NCBI RefSeq assembly: GCF_006345805.1 | Contig: NC_042998.1 | Location: 134,850,001 to 134,914,000 of the forward strand | DNA length: 64,000 nucleotides | DNA from: Octopus sinensis | Lineage: Eukaryota | Direction of reading: 5' to 3' | In this document: in pieces, positions 3,238-62,119 of the stretch | Layout of the letters: every line of letters starts with the position of its first letter | Numbering within the stretch: the stretch's first letter is position 1 | Notes under the pieces: generated by a model | The model's database searches: none | The model's input: only the letters and a program-made list of their open reading frames with translations | What the model was told of the DNA's origin: nothing | Made by a program: the position numbers and the translations under genes

Positions 3238-3434
3238 ATACGATGCCAATTGATGTTCTTTCATTTGTTGCAAGATGGAATCAGTTATATTAGGTTCCAA
3301 TTGTAATATAGCTTTAGAACCAAACTGGTTAACTAGGCAGCACAAAGCACCATATTTTCCTTTACTGCTCCAGCTGATATCTTGGAGCAGCCTGACAGTT
3401 AACTCAGACACAAACTCCATATTGCTTCCAGGCT
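3238..3434 (-). CDS. THADA: THADA exon
   Basis: tttcag|...|gtaagt; phase 1 to 0; EFVSELTVRLLQDISWSSKGKYGALCCLVNQFG...HQLASY vs human FFVELTESLLRLEWHIKGKYTCLGCLVECIG...QSLVPY. Confidence 0.92.
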
Positions 3435-14302: not shown

Positions 14303-16948
14303 CTGAATTAAAGAACAGAAACTTATGAATATCAATATAACAACAGAACAAATTAAACATTCATCATCATTTAACATCTGTTTTTTACATGCTGGCATGG
14401 GTTGGATGGTTTAACAGGAGCTGATCAGTTAAAGAGTTGTCCAGGCTCCAAGTCTGTTTTGGCATAGTTTTTATGGCTGGAGCCCTTCCTAATGCCAACC
14501 ACGTTACAGAGTGTACTGGGTGCTTTTACACAGCACCAGCATGAGGGAGCTGATTTTTATGTGACACTGGCACCTACAAGCCTGCGAGATTAGGATCACT
14601 CAGCTGAAAAGGGATGCAGGGGGCATGCCTGTATGCAAGGACAACTGCACTTTTGCTTAGCTTGATGTGTCTTCTCAAGCACAGCAATCACCTGAAGTTT
14701 CAGACCCTCATTTCCAATAACAAAGACAACAGAATTGTTAGTGTCAGAAAAAATGTTTTGCAACATTTTTACTCTTTCCTTACACACTGAGTTCAAATTC
14801 TGCCAAGGTTAACTTAGCCTTTCTTCCGGCATAATAAAATAAATACTAGTCAAGTACTGAGGTCAATGTAAGGGATTAAACCACATCACTTAAAAATTAC
14901 TGGCCTTGTGCAAAATTATTTCTAATAGCTCATATTTTCAAAGGGCTTTACAAAAGAGAAACAGCTTAACTCCTAAAAATCAGAATATGCTTAGATGTCA
15001 CTTGCATGCAAGTATGACTTGGTAGTTTGTAGCATGTTTTTACTAATTGTTTTAGGTGTCTACATAATTGCAAGAATAGTGCTCCTCAGTGTTTTACATA
15101 GCAAGTCATTGAGGATGTGACAGATGGGGAGGGGGAGAGAGAGAGAGAGAGAGAGAGAGCTGCACCAGCACTCAGTTAGTACACATCTACAGCTAAATAG
15201 AGTGGAGCAGTGTGAAATAATGTGTCTTGCTCAAAAAGGACAACATGCCATCCAGTCCAGGAACTGCACTCAGGAATGTGACATGATTATGAGCCCAACA
15301 CTCTAATCACAAAGCCATGTTGTATGGTTAGGGCATTAGGTTCACAATCTTTAAAATGCTGACTCTCAAGGAGAAACATTAAATTCAGGAATAGCAAAAC
15401 AGATAAACAGGTATAAAGTGAAAGTACAAACTACCATGGAACGAAGTCATTGTAACAGACTGAAAACAGTGGTGGGAGCACTGAAAAATAAGACAGTGCA
15501 TCATTATCATTTAATCATTATCTTTTACTTGTTTCAGGCATTGAGCTGTGGCCATGCTGGGGAACTACTTTGACAGGTTTAGTCAAACAAATCAACTCTA
15601 GTACTTATTTTGAAGTCTGACACTTATTCTACCAGTCTCTTTTGCTGAACTACTAAGTTACAGAGATGTAAACAAGCCAATACTTGTTGTGGGGGTGAGA
15701 TGACAGACTCAGACACAAAGACACACAGGTAAATCATCACCATTTACTGTCTAATTTTCCATGTTGGCATAAGTTGAACGGTTTCACAGGAGCTGGTACG
15801 TCAGAGAACTGCACCAGGCTCAGATGCCTGTTTTGGCATGGTTTCTATGGAGGTGTGTGGCTTCATGGTTAGGGTGTTGGCTTCATGATTACAAGATTGT
15901 GGTTTCAATCCCTGGACCAGGTGACGTATTGTGTTCTTGAGCAAAACACTTAATTTCATGTTGCTCCAGTCCACTCAGCTGGCAAAAATGGGTAATCCTG
16001 CAACAGACTGGCATCCTGCACAGGCGGGGAATTTATACACCTTGGAAACTGGGAAACCAGCCTTTATACGTCAGCATGACTTGAGAAGGTTAAAATAAAA
16101 AAGTTTGGCATGGTTTCTACAGCTGGACATCCTTCCTAATGCCACTTTACAATGTGCACTGGGTGCTTTTTATGTGACACCAGCATCAGCAAGGTCACCA
16201 AGTAATTTGCAAGACAAAGACCCTTTTATAGGAATAAGCAGCAGGAATATTTAACATAGAAATTAAACCTTAATCACTATGTCTAATGCAAAAAGACAAC
16301 TCAAGGATACGATTGCAATTTTCTAGAATATTACCAACATCATAAAATAATCTGACCATCCAAGACTTCTCGTGAAACCAGATCTAATAACAATTTCATC
16401 TTTAGTGCACTTTTTCTGAGCAAAACCACCACTCAGCACATTGGAGCGACTGCTGACAGAGAGCAAACATCAGACTGGATACAGAAGACAGTAGCAGTTG
16501 AGAGTAGCACAACCAGCAGCTGGCTAGAGTGCTGTCACAACAATGGACAGACATCGACCACAACATACAATGATCAGCTAACAGCACAATAGCAACTACT
16601 ATGATACCTAGTCCAAGAACAATAAGCTTCAATCTATCTCAGTGTTTGATGTTCGTAGTAACATTTTTTTTTGTTTACAATAAAAATTAATATATTTTTT
16701 ACCAAAATTCACAAACAGATTTCAGTGGTCTTATCATAATTTATATACACACACAGAGACATACAATGGGCTTCCACACAGTCTCTGTCTATCATATTCA
16801 CTCAAAAGGGACTGGTCAGCCCAGAACTATTGTAGAAGACACTTACTCATGGTGCCATGCAGTGGGACAGAACCCAAAATTATGTACTTGCAGAGTAAAC
16901 AGGATGCATTTAAGCACAATGACATAATATTTTGATCATTAACATTAC

Positions 16949-17051
16949 CTTCTTGGATGAGAATTAAAGCTGTTGATGCCAGCTGTGCTGAAATTGTGTC
17001 CATTTCATCAGTGTTGGAAGATATTGCATTGGTATAAGCTGCAGAGAATTT
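16949..17051 (-). CDS. THADA: THADA exon
   Basis: ttttacag|...|gtaatg; phase 0 to 1; KFSAAYTNAISSNTDEMDTISAQLASTALILIQE; phases fit the next exon. Confidence 0.8.
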
Positions 17052-17159
17052 CTGTAAAACTTTATTCACTGCTTTCGATGTCGACAGACAGTGATGCATG
17101 ATTTCATTGCATTGTACAGGTGGGATGTTGGTGAGGCTAACAAAGAAACAGAGACATAC

Positions 17160-17640
17160 ACTAGGTGATGACTTGACAACTACAACATTGGTAATGGAAG
17201 AAGTAGTGGTAACAGTAGATGAAGTGATAATGATAGATGTATTGATAATGATGGATGTAATGGTAATGACAGAAGTAGTGGTAATGACAAAAGTAATGAC
17301 AGTGGTAGTGGTAATGATAAAGATAGTGGTAATGACAGAGATAGTGGTAATGACAGAGATAGTGGTAATGACAGAGATAGTGGTAATGACAGAGATAGTG
17401 GTAATGAGAGGTAGTAGTAATGACAGAGGTAGTGGTAATGATGGAAAAAGTGGTAATGATGAAGGTTATAACAGTAGTAATGATAAAGGTAGTGGTAATG
17501 GTGGAGGAAGTGGTAATGATGGAAGTGGTGGTAATGATGGAAGTAATGGTAATGACAGGTTAGTGGTAATGACAAGGAGATTGATAATGATGGGAAACAA
17601 TTATAATAGCTATAACAGTGGTGATAATAGTCAAGGGTAA
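17160..17640 (+). repeat. GGTAATGACAGAGATAGT-type 18-bp minisatellite
   Basis: Perfect units at about 17310-17410, degenerate outward; explains ORFs 17098-17640 and 17180-17656. Confidence 0.9.
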
Positions 17641-22699: not shown

Positions 22700-23065
22700 G
22701 TCAAGTATGAAATTTGTAGAAAAGAAAAAAGTTTACTAATGTTTTATAACTACAAGGAATAGTTTTATTCATCAAAGTATGCACCCATATCATCAATACA
22801 CTTTTGCCATTCCAGCAGTAGCTTATCCAACCTGGAACTGTAAAAGCCTGGCAATCTAGAGTCAATAAATCTTGGAAGACCTGTTTTAAAGTATCGTCAG
22901 AATTAAATTTTTTTTCCTGTCAAAAAGTTATCCAAATTCTGGAAGAAATGGTAGTCAGAGGGGGTAAGATTGGGTGAGTATGGCGGATGATGGAGAACTT
23001 CCAACTCCAACTCCAGTAGATTCGCCAATGTCATTTTTGCGATGTGTGGTCTGCCATGAAGTTAA
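22700..23065 (-). mobile_element. Mariner transposase 3' fragment
   Basis: EVLHHPPYSPNLTPSDYHFFQNLDNFLTGKKFNSD (YSPDL motif, D34D third aspartate). Confidence 0.85.
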
Positions 23066-23085
23066 ACAAAAGAAAATATACAAAC

Positions 23086-23252
23086 CCAAGGTGAAATTTT
23101 CTAGTAAGTTCAATATTGCTTCAATCAAAGCTCTTAAGTGGTCGTGTTGGTGATGAGACATGTTCCAGAAATTACTAATTAGATGGCTTATTTCTTGCTC
23201 AATTTGGGTAGCGATACAACTCTGGCTGGCAGGTGGGAAACTTTGGAACAGA
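23086..23252 (-). CDS. THADA: THADA exon
   Basis: tatttag|...|gtttgt; phase 2 to 1; SLFQSFP...EAILNLLENFTLG vs human SLNSLP...NISSCMENFNLG. Confidence 0.85.
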
Positions 23253-23587
23253 CTAAATAAGATAAAGAATGTGATGGAAATTAGCAAATATTTCGGGGCG
23301 AGGGAGGAGTGTACATGCGGTTCATTAACACCAATAATAAAGCTAATAATATTTTAAAATATTGAAATTTTAAAATATTGAAAATTTAATACTGTTCTTT
23401 GTTACAAATTTTTTTCTATTTACTTATTTGTCAGGTTAGGAATCTTTTTTTTTTTATTGCTGGTCTTCAAAAGCGTAGAATGACTGGTCATAATATCAAT
23501 AAGTAATATATACTGTGAAATGCTGTCATTCAAACACATGCACACACAAACACAATTATACAAATATTTTTTTGAAGAAAAGATTAC

Positions 23588-23712
23588 CTTTTAAAAACAT
23601 TTTTCAAAGGATGTCGAGTTGGATAACGAATGTAGATAGCTACCATAACATCAACAGCAATCTGAATATGTTCTGACTGTATGTCATGTTGAGCCTTTAA
23701 TAGTCCAATAAT
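23588..23712 (-). CDS. THADA: THADA exon
   Basis: ccttatag|...|gtaatc; phase 0 to 2; IIGLLK...IQIAVDVMVAIYIRYPTRHPLKNVF vs human IVPLLE...IQSCLDILAGIYLSLSLKNPLKKVL. Confidence 0.85.
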
Positions 23713-24422
23713 CTATAAGGAGAAAAATATAATTTTACACAGCTTTACAAGGGAGATAATCATTTTTTATACTAATTGCTGGAACTACAAAATTGACCAA
23801 CCAGCATCAGCTGTAATCTCAGCTATAACAATGAAAGAGCATCAAGGTGATCGTTTGAATTGTTAGAAATAGCAACTAAATCTCTCTCAAATTACATACT
23901 ATGTTTCAAAAGTGAAGAATATGTTGGATACTGTGGACCAAGATACATATATCTGGATAGGCTGGAATGTCTTTGATTATGAGCTAGCTTAATCAGGGAT
24001 GACATAATATCTATGGGTTGGATGGAGTATGGTGAGATGGATTTCTACAACTGGATGCCTTTTCTGTTGTCAATCTCCAAGCCAGATATATTTTCACAAA
24101 AGACTGCAAACGAAGGACACCACTTGCCTGATAGTGACAATCCTTTAGAACTATTGTGCAATGTTAAGACAAAGGCACACCAACAGGCACATACACACAC
24201 ACACACACACATATATAATGGGATTCCTTCAGTTTCTGTCAAGCAAATCCACTCACAAAGCTTTGGTTGGCCCAGGGCTATAATAGAAGACACTAACCTA
24301 AGGACTGAACCCAAAACTATGAGATTGCAATGCAGAATGCAGGACAGTGTGCAGTATGCGTGTTTATGTAATTACTCATTGTAAAATGTACAAAGACTCA
24401 GGGTGCTCATACGTATACATAC

Positions 24423-24517
24423 TTTTTTGGGGACTTGCAATAATTCTTTATCATTTGTGCAAGTGAATAATTCTGATAAATGAACAAATAAAACTGGATG
24501 TTCTTGCAAATCAGGCT
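24423..24517 (-). CDS. THADA: THADA exon
   Basis: tatttcag|...|gtatgt; phase 1 to 0; PDLQEHPVLFVHLSELFTCTNDKELLQVPKK, positionally like human LASLLLHCVQLTDGVSQIHYIKQ. Confidence 0.75.
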
Positions 24518-24859
24518 CTGAAATAGAAACAAAGAATAAATAGCATGAATATAGGATTTTTTATAAATACTTTACAAAATATGCAACTGACTGATGGCAA
24601 ATTAATATTAAGATAATAATGATGATGATGAATTTATTGTATGCAATATTCAGGTGCACTACAACTCACTGGGAAAGGGTAAAAGAGGGGACATAAAACA
24701 GCAATAAGTTGAGTAAAGAAAAACAGCAATAAGTCGAGTAAAGAAAGACAGCAATAATAGCCAAAAATGCATGAATAGCACACAAAATAAAACATAAAAA
24801 GACAGAAAAGTGAATAGTAAAAGAGCCACTAGAAAGATTATATATATAAATCAGGGGTA

Positions 24860-25570: not shown

Positions 25571-26705
25571 CTAGAGATGTATGGGAAATATTATACACAT
25601 CAAGTGGCTGAACAAATGCAGAAATGTCAGCATACTCAAGCAGGTTAATATCCCTTACAGTGAAACTATGAGTACATGGCATCAAATATGATGAAACAAC
25701 TACATCATGTGAATGCTGGAATATTGGTTATCCAAACAACTGTTTTATTCCCAGCTGGATGAAGGAAAGCACACATGAGACCAAAATGTACTTGATTGAA
25801 ATTTGAAGTGGAGCATTAATCTATATGAGTGGATATTGTTGTAATTCTGTGAAGGCCCAGAGCTGAACAAAGCTCTGTGAATGGATCTGGTAGATGGAAA
25901 CTGAAAGAAACCCATCAGGTGTGTGTATGTGCCTGTGCATGCACTTCCTAGGTTTGATATTGTGCAACTGTTGCAAAATGAGCATCATCCTCATACTTTT
26001 GGTGTCATTTGTTTCAAGTATATATCCAATTATTCCTACCCATCTCATACCTTGAAGATCCACCCTGACACCTAACTCTATTTTTATTACTTTTTAGCTC
26101 CACCCAATTACTCCCACCATCCCTTCTAAAATATGAGTTCTACTTTGGCCCATTTCTCTCATATATCATCCCTCTCTATTCCTTGCATAAAGTTGTCTCC
26201 TTGAGATTTATAGTATTGCAGGCTGCAGGGCAACCTCACTAGTGCTGGTGGCATGAAAAGAGCATCCAGAACATTCCGTAAAGTAATTAGCATTAGGAAA
26301 AGTATCCAGCCATAAAAACAATGCCAAAGCAGACACTGGAGCACCCTTGAACCCATCAGATGCTACCAAACCACTTGACCTATACCAGCATGAAATGTGG
26401 ACATCAAATAATGATGATACTACCATGAGGCAATGAGATAGAAAAATTATTACCATACCAAAAGAAAAAAATGCTTAGCAGCATTTCTTCCAATTTTACA
26501 TTCTGAGTTTAAATACTGCCAGGACTGACTTTGCCTTTCAGGTTTGATAGAATAAATATCAGTTGAACACTGGGGCTGATGTAATTGACTTACAACACCC
26601 TCCCACAAAATTGCTGGCCTTGGTTGTGTGGTAAGTAGCTTGCTTACCAACCGCATGGTTCCGGGTTCAGTCCCACTGCATGGCACCTTGGACAAGTGTC
26701 TTCTA

Positions 26706-28633: not shown

Positions 28634-29865
28634 TTGGATCATCCCATAAATAATGCAGTTTTTTAGTACTTCTTTTATTTTTCAAAATTAAGATAAAGTT
28701 CTTTTTTAAGCTAAAGTATACTCTCCTTCATTTTCTACAATGCTCTTCCATCTATTTGGTAGACTTGCAAGGCCCCACTTCCAAAATTCACTTGTCCCTG
28801 ATGAAAATTACTCCTCCAGTACTGTTCTGACCTCGTCAACAGAATTCATTTTTTTCCCCCGCAAATGATTTTGAAGATTGCAGAATAAATGATAATCAGA
28901 TGGGGTAATGTCCACCAAATATGGTGGGTGGAGCATTGTTTCCCATTCAAACTGCTCCAGCCTTTTGAATGTCATCCTCACTGAATGTGGCCAAGCATTA
29001 TCCTGATGAAAGAACACCTTTCGTCTTGAAACCAAAGATGGTCATTTTTCTTTTAGTGCTGACTTCAGCTGCTCAGGCTGTTCATAGGAGATCTCCTTTG
29101 TTATCGTTTTGTTTGGGTTTAAAAGTTTAAAGTGGATTAAACTTTTCATATCCTAACAAACAGATAACAACATCTTACATGGGTGAAGACCTTCTTTAGC
29201 CTGGGGTGCCAGTGTTTCCCTACCCAGTCTTCAATGCTTGACATTTTTATAGAGAACCCATTTTTCATCACCAGTCACTATTTGGTCCAAAAAAGGTTCA
29301 TTTGTGAGACGTAACAGCAAAGAAGAGCACACATTCACTCTCTGCATGTGAATAGACTTAGAAAGTTTGTGAGGAATCCATTAACCCAATTTGCTAACTT
29401 TTCCGAAGGCACGCAGGTGTCGATGAACGGTAGAATGACCAAATCCAAGATTCTCTGCTAGTTCCTCAACAGTTATGATGGGATTTTGTTCTACCAAGGT
29501 TTGCAGGATGTCCTCATCAAGCTCTACAGGTCTTCCAGGACATGGCTCATCTTCTAGACTGTAGATTCCAGCTCAGAATTTCTGAAACTACCATTGACAC
29601 TGGTTTACACTTATTGTCCAATCCCCATATATTGCATTAATATTCCTTGCACTTTCTATTGAACTCATAAAGCAAAATATGCCAAATATTCTCCATTATA
29701 ACTTCGAAAAAATAACTGTTAAAATCGAACTGAACTCTTCAAAACTTACGCTAAGAATAACTACAAAGTAAAATTACTACCTGCTTTTATAGCAAGTTGA
29801 TGCAGGTAGTTTATCCTGTCCCACTTTGACTTTGAAAAGGCTATATTATTTATGGGATGATCCAA
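28634..29865 (-). mobile_element. Near full-length (about 1.23 kb) defective mariner (DD34D)
   Basis: TIR ttggatcatcccataaata at both ends; HQDNAWPH...HPPYLVDITPSDYHLF. Confidence 0.9.
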
Positions 29866-30733: not shown

Positions 30734-30841
30734 TTGTTTCAAATTATTATTGCCGTAACGATATTATTTCCGTGTTTAAAATTATTACTGTTATAATATC
30801 GTCTGAATTTGATTATATATATATATATATATATATATAAA

Positions 30842-30987
30842 GAAGTTGATTGTTATGACCGATCAGAAAGTGACCATTGGTTTCGCAAAGTCTGGCCATT
30901 TGAGTCTGACGAGTCGCCTATACAACTAAGTGCTTTATAGGTGCGAAACTAATGGTCATTCTCTGACCGACCATAACAATCAACTTC
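30842..30987. mobile_element. Fold-back non-autonomous element carrying a hammerhead ribozyme
   Basis: About 45-bp imperfect inverted arms (gaagttgattgttatg.../...cataacaatcaacttc) between (TA)n tracts; homologous to 54827-55030. Confidence 0.8.
30902..30961 (+). ncRNA. Type I hammerhead ribozyme, catalytic core intact
   Basis: GAGT-CTGACGA-G[tCGCCTATA..TATAGGTG]C-GAAA-C(taatg)G-TC-ATTC: stems I, II and III pair; GUC cleavage site after 30957. Confidence 0.8.
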
Positions 30988-31054
30988 CTAAAAAATATAT
31001 TACTGTTTTAATGTTTTAGGGTGTGCTTCTTTTTCGGATATATGAACTACTGAC

Positions 31055-31095
<41 letters not shown>

Positions 31096-37326: not shown

Positions 37327-38350
37327 ATGGCACACCACGCTAAATTTACTCTCAATCTCCGAAAAGAAATTGTCAAGATGACAGTTTCAGGAATGTCTCG
37401 CTCGGTATTTCACGAGACGGAAGGAGATCTAATAGTGTAGCTTCATGTGTTCTTAAGCTCTATGAAGAAACTAAAGGATTTGAACCAAAAAAGACAACTG
37501 GTAGACCACGTAAAACCCCCATGTGAGATAATGGAGCCATGAAACGGTACGTATTGAAGGATACTTTCGAGACTGCGGCTGGAATTTCTAAGAAAATAAA
37601 ATAAAATAATGGTATGGATGGGAGCCGCTTTACAGCGTGTCGTCGTCTGAAGGAATCTGGATTAAAAACTTGTTCCCCGGCAACGAAACCAACCATCAGC
37701 AAGAAGAACAAGTTGGAAAGGCTTTCGTTTCCAGAACTCATGTGAACTGGAGAGATGTAAATTGGTCAAAAGTTCATTTTAGCGATGAAAGCAAATTCAA
37801 TTTACTAGGTTCATACGGTAGACAGCATGTTAGGCGCATCACAGGAGATCGGCTAAAATCCAAGTGTCTGAAGAAATCTGCCAAGTTTAAAGGAGGAAGC
37901 GTCAGTGTGTGGGGAATGATTTCTTCTGAAGGAGTTGGCCCTCTAGTGCAGATTAAAGAGACTATTAATGCAAATATCTATTTAAATTTGGTTAAACAGC
38001 ATGTGATCCTATCGTTACGAACATTTCCAAATCAACCGTGCATTTTCATGCAAGATAATGCCCCTTGTCATACTGCAAGGCCTGTCACTGGATTCTTTAG
38101 TGAACAAAATATCCAAGCAAGGAGGTGGCCAGCACAAAGTCCAGGCTTAAATCCAATTGAAAACCTTTGGAAGATACTTGGAGATAATGTAATACAAAGG
38201 GTACCAACTACTACGACGAATTTATGGGAGATATAAGAGGAATGGAAGAAAGTAACACCTGACTTGTGCAGGAAACTTGTTATGTCCTGTGGCAATTGAT
38301 GTGCAGAGGTGATCGGATCGCCAAGAAAGGTCTACAAACATCATACGAAG
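37327..38350 (+). pseudogene. Frameshifted Tc1 DD34E transposase
   Basis: GRPRKT, VHFSDESKFNL, FMQDNAPCH, WPAQSPGLNPIENLW. Confidence 0.9.
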
Positions 38351-38662
38351 TGTATTAAGTTCATATTTACATTTCTTTCAATCATTATTATGGTTTTGAG
38401 TCAATTGAAGCATATTTTGGTTTGATCGTTCTCTTATTTTGCACATGAGACATTTGAGCGAAACCAGTTTTAGTATTATTAACTTTATTAAGACCATTGT
38501 ACAAACTTAGATTTTTCATGGAATTTAGTTAATGGTTAACTGTATTTACGAAATCAGTTACGAATTTGTACATTTACTAGCTTTTCCGAAATTAAAAAAA
38601 AAATTGTTCTCATTTTGCTCTCGCTACTATATATATACAGATATATATATATATATATAATA

Positions 38663-38717
<55 letters not shown>

Positions 38718-39013
38718 TATATAAGTTCAGAAAATTTAGATTCAGATGAATATGGTACTTAAGTCGAAGGCACCAGAATTTTGTATGGTATTATCCATAT
38801 AAATCCACGGGGTGATTACAATCAAAATAAGCAATAAGTATTACCTCGCATATACTTGTAGCTTATTTTGATTATATATAATGGTTGGATGTATAAAAGA
38901 CAAAAAAGAGTGAAAAAATAACAGAAGGCTTGTCTTATATGGTTAAAGAATATATTTAAATCGTTATGTTAGAAAAATGTTATAAAATTTTGCGTATAGT
39001 AACATAGTTGTTG

Positions 39014-39052
39014 GAGAAATAACCGGTTTCGTATTTTCTTTTCAAATTTCTC
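39014..39052 (-). ncRNA. Minimal hammerhead, U3:A8 variant (3' pLTR copy)
   Basis: Exact reverse complement of 40754-40792. Confidence 0.6.
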
Positions 39053-40753
39053 AAATTTCTTTACCTATATCGTGTCATGTCTTCGCGATGTTGTGAAATA
39101 TGGAGTTCCAGGCAGGGGAAGGTAATCAGGGATGTTTTCCGGTATAAGGGAGATAATAAAAAATGTTGGGAATGACTAGGTTTGATTAAATTAACATGAT
39201 TTGGTTTAGAAGGAATACAATGTTACAAGTGGTTAGGTTTTGCTTTATATTTTTTCAATGAAGTGAGTTTCCTTATTTAAAAATGTTAGATATGGTAAAG
39301 TTTTGGCCTATATTTGTCAATGAAGAAGGTTTCCTTATTTAATCTAACTTGTGTTGGTGTTCCAATGGCACATTGATAGAATGGAAAGATTTCAAATTGT
39401 GGTAGCATTTGCTTTGCGCATTTCTCAATATGTTCACTAAAGGATATCATTCTGTATTCTGGGAATGCAATCTGCTGTCGATGCAGAGTGCATCTGCGTC
39501 TGAGCGATAATCCCGTGGATTTGGTGACAACCCGAGCATCTTATAACATAAATCAGGTTTTCTGAAGCACAAGTAAAGTCAGATTTGATTTTGAATTTTT
39601 GTCCCTCTTTGAAAAGGAATTCTGATCCTTTAAGAAGGTTTGGGCATGTTGCGCAATTTGGTCTACCACATTTTTTCACTTTTGCATCCGTTATTCTAGA
39701 AAATAATTTTGCCTTTGTGAGGAACTTTTTTAGTGACTTCGGTTGTTTGTAGCTTTTAATGATTTTATGCATGTGTAAAATTTCCTTTGATTTGGGGTCC
39801 TTATGTAGCATTGGTAAATTTTAGGTGATGATGGTGAAGGCTTCTTTGTTTCTAGGGTTGCATGTGGATATGTACGGCAGTATTTTTGGGGAAGGCGTGT
39901 CGCTGTGTTGAACTTTTCTTAAGGTTTCTACGTCGATTTGTGTTGCACGTCTGATTCCATCCTCTATGAGTTGAACTGGGTAGTGTCTGTCAATTAGGGT
40001 GTTTTTTAGTTCTTGCAGTCTAAAGTCTCTGGTATTTTGTTCTGACACTATTGTGCATATCCTTCTTGCAAGGTTGAAGGGGATGTTTGTTTTGGTGTGT
40101 CTTGGGCGGCATGAATTAAATAGGTATTGTTTGGCGTCTGTGGTTTTGTATAAAAATGTCCGTTTCTATTTTTAAGTCTATTTTTTATTTAGTATATCTT
40201 AGAATGGAAGTTCCTTTTCGTTGTACTCCATTGTGAACTGTATGTTTGGGTTGACGCTGTTCAATAGCCATTTGAATTTCATATGTTTATTTGTGTTTTC
40301 ATTCCAGAGTATGAAACAGTCGTCTAGGAATCTTTTCCAATTTTCTTTTACGTATTGGGAAAGGGGGGTTTCCAAAGCTAGATAAAGATTCCTGGTATAT
40401 TATTACTTCCGGGTAGACCATTTTTAGGTTCGCAATGACTGGGGCTGCCCTACACAAGTTAGATTAAATAAGGAAACCTTCTTCATTGAAAAATATAAGC
40501 CAAAACTTAACCATTTCTAACCTTTTTTAATAAGGAAACTCACCTCATTGAAAAAATATAAAGCAAAACCAAACCACTTGTAGCATTGTATCCCTTCTAA
40601 ACCAAATCATGTTAAATTAATTAAACCTAGTCATTCCCAACATTTTTTATTATCTCCCTTATACCGGAAAACATCCCTGATTACCTTCCCCTGCCTGGAA
40701 CTCCATATTTCACAACATCGCGAAGACATGACACGATATAGGTAAAGAAATTT

Positions 40754-41190: not shown

Positions 41191-41234
<44 letters not shown>

Positions 41235-41249
41235 TGTGGTGTGTGTGTG

Positions 41250-42210
41250 TGTGTGTGTGCATTTGTGTACGACGGGCTTCTTCCAGTTTCTGTCTACCAA
41301 ATCCACTCGCAAGGCTTTGGTCGGCCCGAGGCTATAGAAGAAATCACTTACCTAAGGTGCCACGCAGTAGTACTAAACCCGGAACTATGTGGTTGGGAAG
41401 CAAGCTTGTTACCATATAGAAACGATGTGATGTGTGTCAGAATGTATGAGTGCGTGCGCCCACTATTTTTACCTTTTTAACATTAAATTACGTTAGAATC
41501 GTAATCTACACCATATGAAAGCTATCTGGAGATTACATTAAAAAATATCCGTTTTTCTGAAAGTTATTAAGAAACACAATCATTGTAGGATACACTTGCG
41601 TATATGTATATGCCTTGTAGGGCGACCGTGGAATGAATATCATCTGTGTGGCTGAGAGAACATTCGAGCATAATGTAAAAACCATGATGTTACAATTTGT
41701 TTTCAAATTTTGGCAGAAGACCTGAAATTTGGCGGGGACAGGGCTAGCTGTTTTTCGTTGACCCCAGTATTCAATTAATACTTATTTTATCGACCCCGAA
41801 AGAGATGAAAAGTAAAGTCAAATTCAGCGGAATTTGAGCTCGGAACACAAAGCCGACAGAAATGTCGCAAAGCATTTTGTCCGGTGTGATAACGGTTCAG
41901 CCATCTCGGCGCCTATTTTGATGTATAATCTTAATATATAAAAAGTGAATACATGTTTCAAATTGAAGGTCACTGTCTCGCACATGGGTCTCTGAAATTC
42001 TGCATAGGATGATATATATTCACGAAGGTCATAGAGTATATGCTTTTTTTTTTTCTGAGACTTTCCATAAACTTGGAGAAGGCTGGGTATTAATGTTAGT
42101 TCAATATAAAAAAAATATTAAGAAAAACTTTAGATAATTTCGGTAAAACACAATAAAATATAATTAATCTCTAACAACAGTTTACTGTTTTCCGAAAGAA
42201 GCTAAAAATA
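41250..42210. repeat. About 1-kb segment duplicated at about 47680-48610
   Basis: Two SINE remnants plus the unique spacer between them are collinear in both copies. Confidence 0.9.
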
Positions 42211-43563: not shown

Positions 43564-43776
43564 TACACACACACATACATACACACACACATACATACAC
43601 ACACACATACATACATACATATATATACATACATACATATACATACATACATACACACACACATACACACACACACAGTATTGAAGCTTGAGAACAATCA
43701 GATACATTTGCAACACATCTGTTGAAAATATTATTGTTCACACACATACATATACATATATACATACAGACAGACA

Positions 43777-43822
<46 letters not shown>

Positions 43823-45294
43823 ATCCAGCATGGCCACAACCTCAAGGCTGAAACATATAAAAGAATAACAGAATATAAATGTGTGCAAAGTACAAGAAAT
43901 ATTAATGCAGTATATGGGGATTGGACAATAAGCGTAAGGCAGTGTCAATGGTGGTTCCAGAAATCCCGAGCCATAAACTACAGCCTAGAAGACGAGCCTC
44001 ATCCTGAAAGATCTGTAGAACTCGACAAGGACATCCTGAAAACCATGGTGGAACAAAATATCATCGTAACTGTTGAGGAACTAGCAGAGAAGCTTGGATT
44101 TGGTCATTCAACCATTCATTGAGACCTGTGTGCTATCGGAAAAGTCAGCAAATTGGGTCAATGGGTTCCTCACGAACTTTCCGAGTCTAATTGCATGCAG
44201 AGAGTGAATGTATGCTTTTCTTTGCTGTCATATCTCACCACTACTGCGCTATGTATATCTATATATATAAAACTGTAGTTGTGTGAGTGTCTGTCCCCTT
44301 CGATTTAGATTCCTAACTACTCCCACATTTTGCGGTACAGTTTAACCAAATTCGGGTAGCTTATAGTCGTGATTCATATCGAGCCCGTCTGGGTATTAGC
44401 GCGCGTCTACGATGAGTCTACGATTTTAAAAATAATTTAACATCATTTTTTATTCCATTTTAATGCATAATTTTTCGTGTGTCGATGGCGGCGGAGTTGG
44501 CGTCCACGCTCACACCTGCACCTGTGGGGAAGGGAGTGTAAGGAAATCAACGTCGTAATGCGTTGTCAAGGAGACCAGTGTTCTTTTAGAACGACTTCAT
44601 GGCTTGAAGACACCAAAACAGAAATGGCTAAGAAAGCGTCTACATGAGTCTACGATTTAAAAAAAAATTTACCATCGTTTTTTTTCCATTTTAATGCATT
44701 TTTTCGCTATTATATAAGGGAAGTAACTCTCTAAAAATGTCTACGATGAGTCAACGATTTAAAAAAAAATTTACCATCATTTTTTCCTATTTTTTGGCTA
44801 TAACTCTCTAAAAATGGTTTATAGTTATTTCCCTTACAAACCCGAGCAACGCCGGGCGATACTGCTAGTCTTATTATAAAAGGCAGATTTTATCTGCCTC
44901 CCTTTGGGAGTTATACAAATCTACAATATAGGATTTCTTCAATTACAATTTACCTAGCAATTTTAAGAGTACAATGCATCGCGTCATGCCAGGTCCAGTT
45001 TTTAAAATTTAAACTCCAATTAAGCAAAATTTACAGAAAACTCACATTCTGGTGTGTGTGTCAAATGCTTTTCTTAGTCTGGTTTACACCACACGCAAAC
45101 GCACACACACAGTGGGCAACGAATAAAGTGAAACTAGATGTAATATTTGTTTCTCTCTATCACGCTGATAGATACATGAGTAAAATGTATGGGAAGCTAA
45201 CACATAAGTGTGAGTGAAAATGTTCTTGGAAGAGAGTAAATAGCCAGAGATAGTGATTTGAGGAACACTCATACATACATACAACATACATACA

Positions 45295-47175: not shown

Positions 47176-48629
47176 ATTCAATTTAGAAATATTAAATCAA
47201 ATTTCACACAATATAATATATATATATAAAATCATTGAAATTTTATTATTTTTAATTTAAATATTTCTAATATATGTAATTCTCTGGATGGTGTAATTTA
47301 ATTGTTCATTTTGAATTGATAAAAGGTGGGTTTTTTCTAATTTTTTATATATACATGTATATATCTTTTACTTGTTTCGGTCATTTGACAGCAGTTATGC
47401 TAGAACACCGCGTTAGTCGAAGAAATCGATTTCAAGACATTTTTGTAAGCCTATTATTTATTCTATCGCTCTCTTTCGCAGAACCGCTAAGTTACGGGGA
47501 CATAAACACAGCAGCATCTGTTGTCAAGGGATGGTGGGGTACAAACAAGACACACACACACACAAATATATACATACATATATGTGTGTGTATATGTGTG
47601 TACATATATATATGTGTGTGTGTATATATTATGTGTGTGTGTATACGTGTGTGTGTGTGTGTGTGTGCATGTGTGCATGTGTGTACGACGGGTTTCTTCC
47701 AGTTTCTGTCTACCAAATCCACTCACAAGGCTTTGGTCGGCCCGAGGCTATAGTATAAGTCACTTGCCCAAGGTGCCACGCAGTGGGACTGAACCCGGAA
47801 CTATATTGTTGGGAAGCAAGCTTGTTACCATATAGAAACGATGTGATGTGTGTCAGAATGTATGAGTGCGTGCACCCACTATTTTTACCTTTTTAACATT
47901 AAATTCCATTAGAACCGTAATCTACACCATATGAAAGCTATCTGGAGATTACATTAAAAAATATCCGTTTTTCTGAAAGTTATTAAGAAACACAATCATT
48001 GTAGGATACACTTGCGTATATGTATATGTCTTGTAGGGCGACCATGGAATGAATATCATCTGTGTGGCTGAGAGAACATTCGAGCATAATGTAAAAACCA
48101 TGATGTTACAATTTGTTTTCAAATTTTGGCAGAAGACCTGAAATTTGGCGGGGACAGGGCTAGCTGTTTTTCGTTGACCCCAGTATTCAATTAATACTTA
48201 TTTTATCGACCCCGAAAGAGATGAAAAGTAAAGTCAAATTCAGCGGAATTTGAGCTCGGAACACAAAGCCGACAGAAATGTCGCAAAGCATTTTGTCCGG
48301 TGTGATAACGGTTCAGCCATCTCGGCGCCTATTTTGATGTATAATCTTAATATATAAAAAGTGGATGCATGTTTCATATTGAAGGTCACTGTCTCGCACA
48401 TGGGTCTCTGAAATTCTGCATAGGGTGATATATATGCACGAAGGTCATAGAGTATATGCTTTTTTTTTCTGAGACTTTCCATAAACTTGGGAGAAGGCTA
48501 GGTATTAATGTTAGCTCAATATTAAAAAAATATTAAGAAAAATTTTAGATAATTTCGGTAAAACAAAGAAATATAAATAATCACTAACAATAGTTTACTG
48601 TTTTCCGAAAGCTAAAAATATGCGATGTT

Positions 48630-48770
48630 TACGAACCACATGGTTCCGGGTTCAAGTCCCTCTACGTGTACCTTGGGCAAATGTCTTCTACCATAGTCTC
48701 GGTCCGACCAAAGTCTTGTGAGTGGATTTGGTAGACGGAAACTGAAAGAAGGCCGTCGCATATATGTATA

Positions 48771-48807
<37 letters not shown>

Positions 48808-49067
48808 GCATGTGTGTGTGTGTGTATGTGTGTGTGTGTGTGTGTGCGTGCATGTGTGTGTATGTGTGTGCTTGTTTGTGTGTCTATGTTTGTCCCCCCA
48901 ACATCGCTTGACAACCGATGCTGGTGTGTTTACGTCCCCGTAACTTAGCGGTTCGGCAAAAGAGACCGATAGAATAAGTATTAGGCTTACAAAGAATAAG
49001 TCCTGAGGTCGAGTTGCTCGAGCATGGCCACAGTCAAATGACTGAAACAAGCAAAAGAGAGTAAAGA

Positions 49068-51755: not shown

Positions 51756-52391
51756 TCAGAAGAATTTCAAGAAATTACCACGTGAAAATGGTGGGGGATA
51801 ATCTGTATTATCGAATTGATCACAAGGAACAATCCTATCGAAATGTGTTCCTTCTGTATGACATAATAATATATATGATTTGTCATTTTTCGGAGACTTC
51901 GTGGGTTTAAAATGATACCATTGGTATTTTTTGTTTATAACAGGCGTAAAAAGGTAAATAGTTTCCCCTGTAAATTGAGCAGCTGCAAATACCTCCGCAG
52001 TAGTAGCCCAAACTTTGTTCATACGCATTTTATCTACATGCTCCTCTATACTTTCATTATCGTCTAAAAACTTTATGTAATGTAGAGGCTTCGTTTCTAT
52101 TAGATCGACTATTTTGTTCCTGTAGGATATATGATGTTTTTCAACTCCTGATATTTCTTTACTCAGGGCTCTAAAAAAACAATTGCCATCTCCTGATATA
52201 AAGTCGATTCGACGTTCAATTTTAGCTAAAATACGTTCTAGCTGGATGTAAGATTTATCCCTTGGTGGGATTCGAATCTTTGAGGAATTATGTGATGAAC
52301 CAGACGAGTTTTCTGATGCCCGCCCAATTGAACTGGAACGGTGTCTTCTTTTCGTTGGTATATCGCATCTAGTAGCCTCTCTTCGTTTCAT
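51756..52391 (-). CDS. Intronless OTU-family cysteine protease (putative deubiquitinase), 211 aa
   Basis: ISGDGNCFFRALS (Asp/Cys loop), W-ATTAE, HFD (His loop); no stops or frameshifts; an in-frame stop 4 codons upstream fixes the ATG. Confidence 0.85.
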   Translation of the reverse strand: MKRREATRCDIPTKRRHRSSSIGRASENSSGSSHNSSKIRIPPRDKSYIQLERILAKIERRIDFISGDGNCFFRALSKEISGVEKHHISYRNKIVDLIETKPLHYIKFLDDNESIEEHVDKMRMNKVWATTAEVFAAAQFTGETIYLFTPVINKKYQWYHFKPTKSPKNDKSYILLCHTEGTHFDRIVPCDQFDNTDYPPPFSRGNFLKFF

Positions 52392-54173: not shown

Positions 54174-54826
54174 TTTTTCTTTACAGGAAGAATTCAAATA
54201 CTTAAAAACAAAAGATAATATATTCAGTTTTCCTTTGTACAATACTAAAAAAAAAATATATTGTTTATTGAGCACGCGCATCGGCTTCTGGCTCAGAATG
54301 CATTTTAAAAAAATATTATTTTGGAAAATGATCTATAGCTAGTCCTGACTACAAAATGCATCAACAAACACAGCCGTAGATGTGTCTATTGATGCACTTC
54401 GCAATGAAGTGGTGTGGTTAAATAAGGAAGACCTGAATTCCTGCGAAATTCCACCATCGGATCTGATGATGGTTTCGTTGGCTGAACCTTCAGTGTTACT
54501 GTCAATACTATACATGTTAAAGAATAACGTGCGCGCGCGCGAGTGTGTGGTAAGAAATGCAGAAAACAATGTTGGTATTCTTATGCTTTCTTATGCGCAT
54601 ATTTCGATGAGTCAGCAGCTCACTTCCTCGATATTTTCGACTCAGATACTGCACTTTAAGCTTATCTATTGATGTGGTGATTGAATTCACGGCGTGGGAT
54701 TTTGGAGTTTAATCCCCATACTGAGCTCTAAACTCACTCACATCATCATCATAATCATCATCGTCAGTGGACCATATATCCCAAAAAGAAGCACACTCTA
54801 AACGTCAGTGCAGTAATGTATTTACA

Positions 54827-55030
54827 GGAGGTAAATTATATGGCCGGTCATAAAGTGACTAATGGTCTCGTATCCACGCAGCGCTTAGCTTTATAGTCGA
54901 CTCGTTAGACTCCAATGGCCGCGGACATGTAACCTCGTTTCTATTTCCAGTTTGAAAAGAGGTTATATGTCCGCGGCCATTGGATGTGAGACCATTGGTC
55001 ACTCTATGATCGGCCTTATAATTAACATCC
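54827..55030. mobile_element. Second copy of the hammerhead fold-back element, ribozyme decayed
   Basis: Nested inverted repeats; minus strand 54912-54853 reads GAGT-CTAACGA-GTCG...C-GAGA-CCATTAG-TC-ACTT. Confidence 0.75.
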
Positions 55031-57179
55031 TCGTTGGGCACATTGGGCACATTTAGTCGAAAATTTAACTTCGTTAATCTTTAATCCGTTAACCAAAAAG
55101 TTAACTTCATTAATCGTTAATCCGTTAATTCTTTTAAAATGTAACGGAAGTTAACGTTAACGTTTATTGAAAAAAGACATAACTACACTTTGATACCCCA
55201 CCGAGTTTGTTGCCTCAAAACTTCGAGAAAAATGGATACTTTTTCAGGAAACTTTCACCAAATAACCGCTTATATCTTGCAGATTTGTTGTAAAAAAAAC
55301 TTTCCAATGGGTTGGGGAGAGGAGTTTCGGAAAATTCACTGGAGCCGTCATTTTCCCCCTCATAACTTTATGGAAAATAGGTATTTTTTAATGAAATTTT
55401 ATATAAATGCCTTTCAAACGGTGTAGATTACGATCACAAAGAAATTGGTAGACAAACTTTTTGGAAGGTGGCGGGAATGGGGGAGTTTCTAGAAAACGGA
55501 GTTTCGGATCAGACGGCCCACATGAGTTGGAATTTCTCCGTTTTGACGGGGATTTTTCCAAATATTTTTAACCAGAGTCTTCAGAACGATGGGAGGCATC
55601 TTTTTACGAAAAGAAAGAAAAAAAATTTTTTTAATTTTTTTCCACTCCCGCCATCCCCTCACCTCCCCAGTTCGAAACGATTTGGGCTATTTTTTTTTTC
55701 ACTACGCACTTAAAACTCACGAGAGAAACATTTTCGGTTTAAAAGAAATTATTAATAATTTCAGAGGAAAATGTGTGAGTCAAGGGAGATCTGGCTGTTG
55801 ATTCTAGCACATCCCAAAACCTCCCTCCTCGTTTCTTTCTCACTCGCACATCTATTGATATTTTTCAACATTTGTCTCCCCATTAACAAATTTTATAGCA
55901 TGATGATGTCAAAGTAACACACGTGCAGTCCTAACCGAGCGAGGCCGTGTTATGTGCGCGTGTGTGTGTATAAGAAAGAAAAAAACACCTAAAAGCATCT
56001 TTAGTGTTCATATGTAATGCTTATTTGTTCACGTTATTTTTAATTATTCAGGTTCAAGAGGCGTGTCCACAATATTTGTTTGTAACTTTGTAAATTCTTT
56101 GCATACAGATTTGAAATTTTGTCAGTGGGTGCTTGCTTTATACACCACTGGTTTATAGTTATGTAATTTTAGCTGGTCTTGCTGAGTAAATTTGATTTTT
56201 ATGGGCAGGTAAATTTAATTAATAGGTGTAAAAGTAATAACATTATGGATAAACACTAAAATTGAAATTCTTAATGCATCTTAACTGTTTAATTTGTTAC
56301 TAAAATTATCCTAGACGGCAACCGACAAAAATGTTGCCACTTTTTAAGATGAGGTATAATAATTTGAATTAATTAAAATACAGGTATAATCGATGCAAGG
56401 TTTTATTCTTTCTGTAAATATTTCGTATCTCGGTGTGGAATTTTTTTTCCACAGTTTTTTTGGGTGCATTCAACGTATCTGACCTCCAAACCCGCCGCAA
56501 GCCACTTTTTTTCGGAAAAGAAAAGTGGGGACCTCGAAGTTTCCCATCTAGGGAATTTTGTTTCGCAGGTTTTTTTCTTATCCAGGTTATTTTGCATGCT
56601 TTCAACGATTGTGACATTGAAATCACGCGTAAAGGAAAGATTTGGCTGCTATTTCTAGCATGCCCTGCTACCACGTAACAGCTATTTGCGTTCACACCAA
56701 AATATTTACAACTTTTTCCTTCCATTTATTTGACAAGACAAAGAAATTTCCCGCTGTCTTTGCAAGCGACAAGCGGGTGGATTTGGTTTCAAATCCATGT
56801 AGGGCTAAACGAGGTCCCACAAGTTATTTATAAGTGGTGTTATATCGAGGTTGAAAGAATGATGCGTACAGTATTAAATTTGCTAAGACAAACTGAAAAC
56901 AAGGGGAACTTTTAAACGTTTAGCGGTTTTTATGAGATGTTGGGGTTAACGGACTAAATGTAACGATAATGATAATTAGTCCGATAATGATTTTCAATGT
57001 TTACTTAAAAGTTAAATCGTTACCGAAAATGTTGACTTCGTTAATTAACGATTAACGGACTTACGTCATTTATGGATGCACGGTCAAATGTGATTGACAG
57101 TGGACGTATATGATCAAATGCAAATAGATAATTTATTAACAACAGATAAATTTATTTAATTTGCAATGGCATACCTAGA

Positions 57180-61600: not shown

Positions 61601-62119
61601 ACCCATAACGGGCCAACAGAGAAGGACATGCATCACATTGGGGACATAAAATATATGATATAATGGAAGATGAAAAAAATGTTTTTGTGTTGTCCCTGTT
61701 ATGTAATCATCACAACAAACATGAACAATCAACGTTGCCCATTGTCTCCCTTGATACAAGGACATTCAGTAAGTTTCCCGCCACAACAAATACCTTGTAC
61801 AACAACGGCAGTCTAATAAAGTATCTCGTATCGTTAACACGTTTTTTCAGTCTCTCTCATTTTCTTAATCTTTCATACTAAGTACTCACTACTTCCTTTA
61901 ATACACAATACATCATATATATATAACAACAACAGTCCCTTCTCTATTGAGGCCTTGTGCCTAATTAAAGTAATAAGGACGTGGGCGTTGCCGTTTGTGC
62001 TTTGTTTGAGTTAGTGAGTTGGCAGTGTATATCCTTGTAAGTACCGTTTTTGTTTAACTGTTATTTATTGAATTGTGGAATTGTTGTTACCTGTTGAACT
62101 TGTTACCGTTTCCCCATTT

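What the first reader, a model, noticed from the sequence alone, without database searches (positions are those of the whole stretch)
30842..30987. Core-intact hammerhead ribozyme at the 5' end of THADA, on the divergent strand
Seen: all core residues are present (C3UGACGA9, G12AAA, GUC), with a 4-bp stem I, a 9-bp stem II and a short stem III. The motif lies in a fold-back element about 170 bp upstream of the candidate THADA ATG and is read on the + strand. Established: type I hammerheads occur in metazoan Penelope-like elements and retrozymes. Inference: upstream-antisense transcripts from the THADA promoter could self-cleave at 30957/30958. If the THADA TSS lies further upstream, the arms would instead fold the 5'UTR into a long hairpin.
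Basis: partly seen in the sequence, partly recalled or inferred. Interest (0 to 1): 0.8.

Follow-up and report, generated by a model that had tools for sequence, protein, structure and literature searches.

The report
Hammerhead motif in octopus retroelement relic
The hammerhead ribozyme motif is really in the sequence, but it sits in an old, broken piece of a mobile element (most likely Penelope-like) upstream of the octopus THADA gene, and nothing suggests that it cuts RNA or regulates the gene there.

Summary
The window is Octopus sinensis chromosome CM016860.1, 134,850,001-134,914,000. The motif at 30902-30961 (+) is as described. It has an intact core, a 4-bp stem I, a 9-bp stem II with one bulged U, and a 2-3-bp stem III. 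It lies inside a 146-nt fold-back.

My descriptor finds only this hit in the window, against 0.05 expected by chance. No Rfam hammerhead model matches it, even at E<=10.

A second copy of the same repeat lies at 54760-55031 (-). Each copy consists of an inverted 3' fragment, a direct fragment and a 68-nt tail at one end only. Copy 1 sits in a (TA)n microsatellite. This matches published Penelope-like element (PLE) insertions, and the helix dimensions match published PLE "minimal" hammerheads.

Activity at this locus is unlikely:
- Copy 2 has lost G5, A14 and stem II.
- In copy 1 the long hairpin is 30 kcal/mol more stable than any hammerhead-compatible fold.
- Such minimal hammerheads cleave poorly, and only as dimers. 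There is one here.

THADA is confirmed on the minus strand. Its nearest supported coding exon is 6.3 kb away, and its ATG and TSS are not located.

Verdict: a probable PLE-derived hammerhead relic, ordinary, with no support for a role at the THADA promoter.

The parts
30777..30797 (+). Upstream direct repeat of the first 20 nt of the tail. It may be the remnant of a partial tandem copy.
   Evidence: It matches 30991-31012 at 19/20. The score was reached by 4 of 2000 shuffles and by 0 of 1706 other window segments (also D1).
30814..30839 (.). (TA)13 microsatellite on the left flank of the insertion
30842..30887 (+). Left arm. It is an inverted copy of the last 46 nt of the direct body and carries no tail.
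   Evidence: Its reverse complement matches 30942-30987 at 40/46 (I1).
30888..30987 (+). Direct body of the element. It carries the hammerhead motif, and its last 46 nt form the right arm.
30902..30961 (+). Type I hammerhead motif. Stem I is 30902-05/30958-61. The core box CUGACGA is 30906-12. Stem II is 30913-22/30936-44. GAAA is 30945-48. Stem III is 30948-56. GUC is 30955-57, so the putative cleavage site is 30957/30958.
   Evidence: It is the only descriptor hit in the window. No Rfam model matches.
30988..31055 (+). 3' tail. It is present at one end only, is shared with copy 2, and ends in CACTGACG.
   Evidence: It aligns to 54762-54823 (-), nhmmer E = 2.7e-07. It includes a 24-nt block identical at 23/24.
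31058..31090 (.). (TA)16 microsatellite on the right flank of the insertion
54760..55031 (-). Second copy of the same repeat family. It consists of an inverted 78-nt fragment, a 12-nt loop, a direct 116-nt body and a tail. Its hammerhead core is degenerate: CUAACGA, GAGA, and a broken stem II.
   Evidence: It is also present in O. vulgaris. It is not found at the orthologous place in O. bimaculoides.
24375..24560 (-). ORF segment that holds the most 5' THADA coding exon supported by homology (profile positions 32-64). It has no in-frame Met, so at least one more exon lies upstream.
   Evidence: THADA N-terminal profile, E = 0.0012. It is collinear with hits in 23587-23712, 22958-23353 and 16830-17465. 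Further exons follow down to 136.

Best explanation
The fold-back and its 68-nt tail (30842-31055) are an old, heavily 5'-truncated insertion of a retroelement into a (TA)n microsatellite. The retroelement is most likely a Penelope-like element or a short non-autonomous derivative of one. The insertion consists of an inverted 3' fragment, then a direct 3' fragment, then a tail at one end only. The hammerhead motif in the direct fragment is the element's own minimal type I hammerhead, inherited by descent. At this locus it is a relic. It stands alone and is locked into a 46-bp hairpin, and it belongs to a kind that cleaves poorly and only as dimers, so it probably does nothing to THADA or to divergent transcripts.

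Shown: the motif, the architecture, the second copy and its decay, the energetics, and THADA's identity and strand.

Inferred: the Penelope-like origin, descent of the motif, and its inactivity.
For: (1) Motif geometry. Helix I is 4 bp. Helix II is 9 bp with an unpaired U near its 5' end. G10.1-C11.1 is present and helix III is 2-3 bp. [quoted passage not shown] It reports them mostly as single motifs in truncated elements.

(2) Architecture. Both family copies are an inverted fragment, a direct fragment and a one-sided tail. The internal break points differ: 46 nt inverted in copy 1, against 78 nt with a 38-nt gap in copy 2. Copy 1 has (TA)n on both sides and a partial tail repeat upstream. 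PMC8557442 describes (TA)n targets, an inverted 5'-truncated copy next to the direct one, partial tandems, and a tail at one end only. PMC11167929 explains the tail by internal starts of reverse transcription.

(3) The motif is on the same strand as the tail and about 100 nt from the unit's 3' end, as drawn for PLEs.

(4) PLEs are a major repeat order in Octopus and have recently active families (PMC13282606). By my reading, ORFs at 39437-40048 (-) look like a GIY-YIG endonuclease remnant. They have no Pfam hit.

(5) Chance alone gives 0.0075 or fewer such hits per window.

(6) For inactivity. The hairpin gives -69 kcal/mol against -39 for the best hammerhead-compatible fold. Copy 2 has G5A and A14G, and 5 of 9 positions of the stem II 3' strand are changed without compensation. 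The published in vitro activity of this kind is low and dimer-dependent.
Against: - No reverse transcriptase or endonuclease ORF adjoins either copy.
- The PLE-like remnant at 39.4 kb shares no sequence with the element and has no hammerhead in its 3' region.
- No Rfam hammerhead model scores the motif.
- The tail is 68 nt, not the usual 30-40.
- The unpaired base lies after G10.1, not between positions 9 and 10.1.
- In both copies the arms start at nearly the same internal point, which also fits a fold-back DNA element with fixed terminal inverted repeats.
- Only two copies could be reached. The ancestral state of the core is therefore unknown, and no covariation supports the helices.
Confidence: 0.55

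Rival explanations
1. A chance hammerhead-like pattern in one copy of a fold-back (MITE-like) DNA element that has nothing to do with Penelope-like elements. The GAAA box, stem III and the 3' strand of stem I are simply part of a terminal inverted repeat. The CUGACGA box and a central hairpin happen to complete the pattern.
For: - The 3' half of the motif lies wholly in the right arm.
- Where the copies differ at A14 (GAAAC against GAGAC), the left arm differs too (GTTTC against GTCTC). Arm pairing is therefore kept while the hammerhead core is not.
- Copy 2 has neither the core nor stem II.
- Rfam finds nothing.
- The loose descriptor is expected 0.05 times per window, which means thousands of times per genome.
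- Tc1/mariner relics lie in the same window.
Against: - At the observed quality the chance expectation is 0.0075 or less per window.
- The details match published PLE minimal hammerheads, and my descriptor did not ask for those details.
- A conserved 68-nt tail outside the inverted repeat, on one side only, is not a MITE feature. Nor are the different internal structures of the two copies.
- The CUGACGAG-GUCG block is among the best conserved stretches between the copies, 25/28 against 75% overall.
Confidence: 0.3
2. The motif is an active ribozyme that cleaves + strand (upstream-antisense) transcripts from the THADA promoter at 30957/30958.
For: The core is intact and all three helices can be drawn. 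The motif lies 5' of THADA on the opposite strand.
Against: - The THADA start is not located, and the nearest supported exon is 6.3 kb away.
- The hairpin outcompetes the hammerhead fold by 30 kcal/mol. Even the isolated 60-mer prefers another fold.
- It is a single copy of a kind that needs dimers and is weak even then.
- The self-duplex of helix III is only -5 kcal/mol.
- The core is not conserved in the only related copy.
- No expression data were available.
Confidence: 0.04
3. What matters at this locus is the long hairpin, not the ribozyme. If it is transcribed on either strand, for example in a THADA 5'UTR or first intron, the hairpin is a double-stranded RNA that could be edited by ADAR or processed into small RNAs.
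For: The hairpin is very stable on both strands: -69 kcal/mol on + and -72.5 on -. The weak Rfam matches to long plant miRNA precursors reflect the hairpin shape only.
Against: There is no evidence of transcription. The arms have drifted to 87% complementarity, as expected without constraint. The Rfam scores are far below gathering (24 bits against 110).
Confidence: 0.07

Closest known systems
Minimal type I hammerheads of Penelope-like elements (min-HHRs; Cervera and de la Pena 2014, PMC4209133)
   Same: It has an intact core, a helix I of 4 bp and a long helix II (9 bp) with an unpaired base near its 5' end. G10.1-C11.1 is present and helix III is very short. It occurs as a solo motif in a truncated element, next to an inverted partner fragment.
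   Different: The unpaired base follows G10.1 instead of preceding it. Loop 3 is only quasi-palindromic. No pLTR or RT-EN ORF is attached. No family-wide covariation is available.
Penelope-like element insertion structure (Craig et al. 2021, PMC8557442; tail mechanism in PMC11167929)
   Same: The target is a (TA)n microsatellite. An inverted 5'-truncated copy abuts a direct copy. There is an extension ('tail') at one end only, and a possible partial tandem remnant upstream.
   Different: The whole insertion is only 214 nt and has no coding part. The tail is 68 nt rather than 30-40. Copy 2 is followed by an (ATG)n-type repeat, not (TA)n.
Metazoan non-LTR retrozymes (Cervera and de la Pena 2020, PMC7229834; 2026 preprint 10.64898/2026.07.22.740005)
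   Same: It is a short, non-coding, type I hammerhead-bearing repeat that is probably derived from PLEs.
   Different: Retrozymes are tandem arrays with a hammerhead in each unit, which allows dimeric cleavage and circular RNA. Here there is one hammerhead and no tandem unit.
Rfam hammerhead families (Hammerhead_1 RF00163, HH9 RF02275, HH10 RF02277, Hammerhead_II RF02276, Hammerhead_3 RF00008)
   Same: The core nucleotides and the three-helix junction are the same.
   Different: None of the models scores the motif, even at E<=10 on 72 nt.
MITE or fold-back DNA transposon relics
   Same: It has 46-51-bp inverted arms, small size, AT-rich flanks, and arm changes that keep the pairing between copies.
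   Different: It has an asymmetric conserved tail outside the arms. The two copies differ in internal organisation. No clear target-site duplication is seen.

Membership tests
Hammerhead ribozyme, type I | Conserved core: C3 U4 G5 A6 N7 G8 A9, G12 A13 A14, the A15.1-U16.1 pair, and H17 at the cleavage site | tested here: met
   CUGACGA is at 30906-12, GAAA at 30945-48, and GUC at 30955-57.
Hammerhead ribozyme, type I | Three helices around the core, with helix I open and helices II and III closed by loops | tested here: met
   Helix I has 4 bp (one G-U). Helix II has 9 bp with one bulge. Helix III has 2-3 bp. Helices I and III are marginal.
Hammerhead ribozyme, type I | Scores with a curated covariance model (Rfam hammerhead families) | tested here: not met
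   There is no hit at gathering score, none at E<=10 on 271 nt, and none at E<=10 on 72 nt.
Hammerhead ribozyme, type I | Core and helices conserved, with compensatory changes, in related sequences | tested here: not met
   The only relative is copy 2. It has G5A and A14G. Five of 9 positions of the stem II 3' strand are changed without compensation. The sample is too small to settle the ancestral state.
Hammerhead ribozyme, type I | Site-specific self-cleavage in Mg2+ | not testable with these tools
   This needs transcription and cleavage assays. Energetics argue against the active fold: -39 against -69 kcal/mol in the full element, and -4.2 against -9.8 for the 60-mer.
PLE minimal hammerhead (min-HHR) | Short helix I (4-5 bp) and long helix II (7-8 bp) | tested here: met
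   The helices are 4 bp and 9 bp. The criteria come from PMC4209133.
PLE minimal hammerhead (min-HHR) | [quoted passage not shown] | tested here: inconclusive
   G10.1-C11.1 is present (30913/30944). The unpaired U (30914) lies one position further in, after 10.1.
PLE minimal hammerhead (min-HHR) | Minimal helix III with palindromic 15.2-16.2 and loop 3, which allows a dimer | tested here: inconclusive
   The C15.2-G16.2 pair is present. ACUAAUGGU is self-complementary at 8 of 9 positions, with two G-U pairs and an A-A mismatch. Its duplex is only -5 kcal/mol. No second motif lies nearby to pair with.
PLE minimal hammerhead (min-HHR) | Lies in the pseudo-LTR of an element that encodes RT and a GIY-YIG endonuclease | tested here: not met
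   No such ORF adjoins either copy. The candidate endonuclease remnant at 39437-40048 shares no sequence with the element. Full-length relatives could not be searched.
Penelope-like element insertion | Microsatellite target, inverted 5'-truncated copy next to a direct copy, and a tail at one end only | tested here: met
   (TA)13 and (TA)16 flank copy 1. The inverted and direct fragments are 87% identical in both copies, and the tail is on one side only. The criteria come from PMC8557442. The tail is longer than usual.
Metazoan non-LTR retrozyme | Tandem repeat units, each carrying a type I hammerhead | tested here: not met
   There is a single motif. Profile and descriptor scans find no tandem unit.
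MITE (cut-and-paste DNA element) | Terminal inverted repeats at the very ends, flanked by a short target-site duplication | tested here: inconclusive
   Inverted arms are present. A conserved tail lies outside the right arm. The (TA)n flanks hide any duplication. Copy 2 shows none.

The most novel reading that the evidence does not exclude
Octopus genomes may carry a family of very short, hairpin-shaped, non-coding derivatives of Penelope-like elements. In these the hammerhead would be masked by the inverted arm and become active only in transcripts that start inside the element or pair with a second copy. That would make it a conformationally gated ribozyme. At this locus it would process divergent transcripts near the THADA promoter or supply an ADAR or small-RNA substrate.
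Probability: 0.05. Interest if true: 0.5.

Novelty: new member of a known kind. Interest (0 to 1): 0.18.

Why it matters
If the reading is right, this is one more example of the minimal hammerheads that Penelope-like elements have scattered through animal genomes, here in a cephalopod. I found no open paper that describes such motifs in cephalopods. Its position near THADA looks incidental. It matters mainly as a caution: an intact core in one repeat copy does not make a working ribozyme. A genome-wide census of this family in Octopus would be cheap. It could show whether cephalopod PLEs keep their hammerheads, and whether the hairpin-plus-tail unit is a distinct non-autonomous lineage.

Tried and rejected
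- **Rfam.** I ran three scans: the whole window at gathering score, 271 nt at E<=10 and 72 nt at E<=10. None gave a hammerhead hit. The only matches were to long plant miRNA hairpins, far below threshold, and reflect hairpin shape only.
- **Loose core pattern.** It gave 10 hits against 3.5 expected. The one at 29003-29043 lies inside a mariner coding remnant and fails the helix test, so it is chance.
- **More family copies.** blastn and nhmmer of the window found only copy 2. Two metagenome scans with conserved blocks found nothing.
- **More octopus DNA through proteins.** Protein searches with a THADA ORF and with a Tc1-like ORF gave nothing useful for reaching more octopus DNA. Exact look-ups of 25 window ORFs failed. 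Only the OTU gene worked, giving O. vulgaris and O. bimaculoides DNA around 41.7-62.4 kb. The ortholog of copy 1 could therefore not be examined.
- **Empty site for copy 2 in O. bimaculoides.** The interval is a 1.76-kb block against 289 unrelated bp. It is not a clean empty site.
- **A hammerhead in the 3' region of the PLE-like remnant at 38.7-39.4 kb.** None was found.
- **A PLE ORF starting in the motif, as in Anolis Poseidon.** All ATGs after the motif run into stops within a few codons (sequence).
- **A-to-G hypermutation between copies as a sign of editing.** The changes run in both directions, so I rejected this.
- **The bacterial promoter and terminator scanner.** Not used, because it does not apply to an animal genome.

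Full report
**Where the window comes from.** An OTU-domain ORF of the window (51756-52391, -) is on record at CM016860.1:134,901,756-134,902,391 of Octopus sinensis assembly GCA_006345805.1. The 20.6 kb around it are 100% identical to the window. The window is therefore CM016860.1:134,850,001-134,914,000. The same stretch is 98.6% identical in O. vulgaris (L002). In O. bimaculoides (L003) it aligns in blocks that are mostly 89-94% identical.

**The observation.**
- Stem I is GAGU (30902-05) paired with AUUC (30958-61).
- The core box is CUGACGA (30906-12).
- Stem II is 30913-22 paired with 30936-44.
- GAAA is at 30945-48.
- Stem III is very short.
- GUC is at 30955-57.

Three small corrections apply. 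Stem II reaches 9 bp only with a bulged U at 30914 and one G-U pair. Stem I contains a G-U pair. Stem III has two standard pairs plus an optional U-G.

The fold-back is real. Its arms are 30842-87 and 30942-87, 40/46 complementary, and it folds at -69 kcal/mol with z = -10.

**Chance.** My own type I descriptor finds this site and no other on either strand. A looser 'minimal' descriptor gives the same result. It also finds nothing in the 41 kb of O. vulgaris and O. bimaculoides DNA that I could fetch. In 2000 simulated 64-kb sequences with the window's dinucleotide make-up, the descriptor fires 0.0485 times per window. With stem II of 7 bp or more it fires 0.0075 times, and never at the observed quality. 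The motif is thus unusual for one window. A scan of a genome of a few Gb would still meet many loose chance hits.

**Curated models.** No Rfam hammerhead family matches. This holds at gathering score, at E<=10 on 271 nt and at E<=10 on the 72-nt motif alone. This counts against formal membership. It is not decisive, because the Penelope-type minimal variants were originally found with relaxed descriptors, not with these models.

**A second copy.** A profile search found one relative, on the minus strand at 54760-55031. The two copies are 75% identical over 162 nt. The shared unit is larger than the fold-back. It continues for 68 nt beyond the right arm (30988-31055 in copy 1) and includes a 24-nt block identical at 23/24. 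After this tail come (TA)16 in copy 1 and an (ATG)n-type repeat in copy 2.

**Anatomy of the two copies**.
- In copy 1, the reverse complement of the left arm equals the last 46 nt of the direct body (40/46).
- In copy 2, the inverted part is 78 nt. It equals the 116-nt direct body minus 38 nt. The missing piece is the hammerhead box plus stem II, and it is bounded by TGGA direct repeats. Identity is again about 87%.
- The tail is present on one side only in both copies.
- Copy 1 sits between (TA)13 and (TA)16.
- A 20-nt copy of the start of the tail lies 44 nt upstream of copy 1's left arm. It matches at 19/20, a score reached by 4 of 2000 shuffles.

**Comparison with Penelope-like elements (PLEs).** This anatomy is what Craig et al. 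describe for PLE insertions: a bias for microsatellites such as (TA)n, partial tandems, an inverted 5'-truncated copy abutting the direct one, and an extension or 'tail' often present at one end only (PMC8557442). The tail is explained by internal starts of reverse transcription (PMC11167929).

The motif's dimensions match the minimal hammerheads that Cervera and de la Pena found in PLEs. [quoted passage not shown] Most of them occur as single motifs in truncated elements, and some as pairs on opposite strands (PMC4209133).

PLEs are one of the six transposable-element orders annotated in O. vulgaris and include recently active families (PMC13282606). ORFs at 39437-40048 (-) read to me like the zinc-finger linker and GIY-YIG endonuclease end of a PLE. 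They have no Pfam hit. Their 3' region also ends in (TA)n.

**Limits of that reading.** No RT or endonuclease ORF adjoins either copy. The remnant at 39.4 kb shares no sequence with the element and has no hammerhead. The tail is longer than the usual 30-40 nt. The unpaired base lies after G10.1 rather than before it. The arms begin at almost the same internal point in both copies, which a fold-back DNA element would also show.

Where the copies differ at A14 (GAAAC against GAGAC), the left arm differs too (GTTTC against GTCTC). This fits arms made afresh from each master copy at insertion. It fits equally well an inverted repeat that is kept matched for its own sake. In either case the master of copy 2 already lacked an essential hammerhead residue.

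Copy 2 also has G5A. In the 3' strand of its stem II, 5 of 9 positions are changed without compensation. With two copies I cannot tell which state is ancestral.

**Activity.** In any transcript that contains the left arm, the best fold that keeps the hammerhead helices is -39 kcal/mol, against -69 for the hairpin. Without the left arm the figures are -18.2 against -32.2. For the bare 60-mer they are -4.2 against -9.8, with the core pairing to the cleavage site. The self-duplex that would extend helix III in a dimer is worth only -5 kcal/mol, and no second motif is nearby. Published minimal PLE hammerheads showed no cleavage as monomers and weak cleavage as dimers. In the Anolis element, hammerhead mutants did not affect insertion in vitro.

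If the arms were identical when the insertion formed, their 13% divergence implies a long period of neutral drift. Survival of about 15 critical bases in one copy and their loss in the other is then unremarkable.

**THADA.** The ORF at 3193-3459 (-) matches residues around 430-500 of roughly 1,800-2,000-aa proteins. Five of those proteins carry the THADA/Trm732 domains PF10350, PF25150 and PF25151. tblastn places further exons collinearly on the minus strand, from 17129 down to 136. A profile of THADA N-termini places exons within ORFs at 24375-24560, 23587-23712, 22958-23353 and 16830-17465.

The gene identity, its strand and 'the motif lies 5' of it' are therefore confirmed. The ORF at 24375-24560 has no in-frame Met before the match, so at least one more exon lies upstream. 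Neither of two small candidate first exons can be supported by homology. They are MKDKYQPTSK followed by a gtaaag donor site, starting at 30705, and MVNNKST..., starting at 30586. The claim of an ATG about 170 bp from the motif is untested, and no TSS or expression data were available.

**Orthology.** Copy 2 is present in O. vulgaris with one substitution. In O. bimaculoides, the 1.76-kb block that holds it is replaced by 289 unrelated bases, so no clean empty site can be shown. The ortholog of copy 1 could not be reached.

**Verdict.** The motif is most likely (about 0.55) a minimal hammerhead inherited from a Penelope-like retroelement and preserved by luck in a truncated inverted/direct insertion. 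The main rival (about 0.3) is a chance pattern in a fold-back DNA element. A working ribozyme acting on THADA-promoter transcripts is unlikely (about 0.04). This is a new member of a known kind, of low interest. A genome-wide census of the family would settle its origin quickly.

Noticed in passing
window 3785-3855 (-): This is the only Rfam hit at gathering score in the window: a tRNA-like sequence (34.3 bits, E = 0.002). It lies among the THADA exons and could be a tRNA gene or the head of a tRNA-derived SINE.
   Followed up: no
window 39437-40048 (-), 3' region 38718-39436, (TA)n 38628-38717: Two adjacent ORFs read like the zinc-finger linker and GIY-YIG endonuclease end of a Penelope-like element (…CGRPNCATCP… …NLIYVIRCSGC…). 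They have no Pfam hit. Their 3' region ends in a (TA)n microsatellite and holds no hammerhead core.
   Followed up: partly
window 51756-52391 (-); L002 and L003 10001-10636: This is an intact single-exon OTU-domain gene of 211 aa. It is called identically in O. sinensis and O. vulgaris. Its ortholog in O. bimaculoides is annotated as XP_014775481.1 (LOC106872856).
   Followed up: partly
window 54826-55031 (-): In copy 2 the inverted half lacks exactly the 38 nt that hold the hammerhead box and stem II. The gap is bounded by TGGA direct repeats. It could be a microhomology deletion or a template jump over the hairpin.
   Followed up: partly
window 30777-30797 and 30991-31012: A 20-nt direct repeat (19/20) brackets the left (TA)n and the fold-back. 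The upstream copy looks like the start of the tail. It may be a partial tandem remnant.
   Followed up: partly
L001 6044-7803 against L003 7962-8251: A 1.76-kb block of O. sinensis and O. vulgaris that contains copy 2 is replaced by 289 unrelated bases in O. bimaculoides. The flanks on both sides are about 89-92% identical.
   Followed up: partly
window 28808-29572 (-), 43688-44122 (+), 37637-38236 (+): These are Tc1/mariner relics. Two are mariner-like fragments, one of which hits HTH_48. The third is a Tc1-like DDE_3 ORF whose closest database relatives are only 61% identical.
   Followed up: partly
window 24013-24384, 25821-26063, 41193-41480, 47531-47835, 48612-48914 and others: A dispersed short repeat recurs on both strands. 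It is recognisable by similar ORF translations (…VSVYQIHSQGFGRPEAI…) next to (CA/TG)n-type runs. It is probably an abundant octopus SINE.
   Followed up: no
window 62075-62857 (+): This is a 260-aa ORF with a borderline CCHC zinc-knuckle match at its C-terminal end (Pfam E = 6.6e-4, just under the gathering score). It looks like the gag of a retroelement that continues beyond the window.
   Followed up: no
window 29003-29043 (+): The sequence here is CUGAUGA…GAAAC…GUC, a second hammerhead-like core string. It lies inside the mariner coding remnant and fails the helix test, so it is a chance match.
   Followed up: yes
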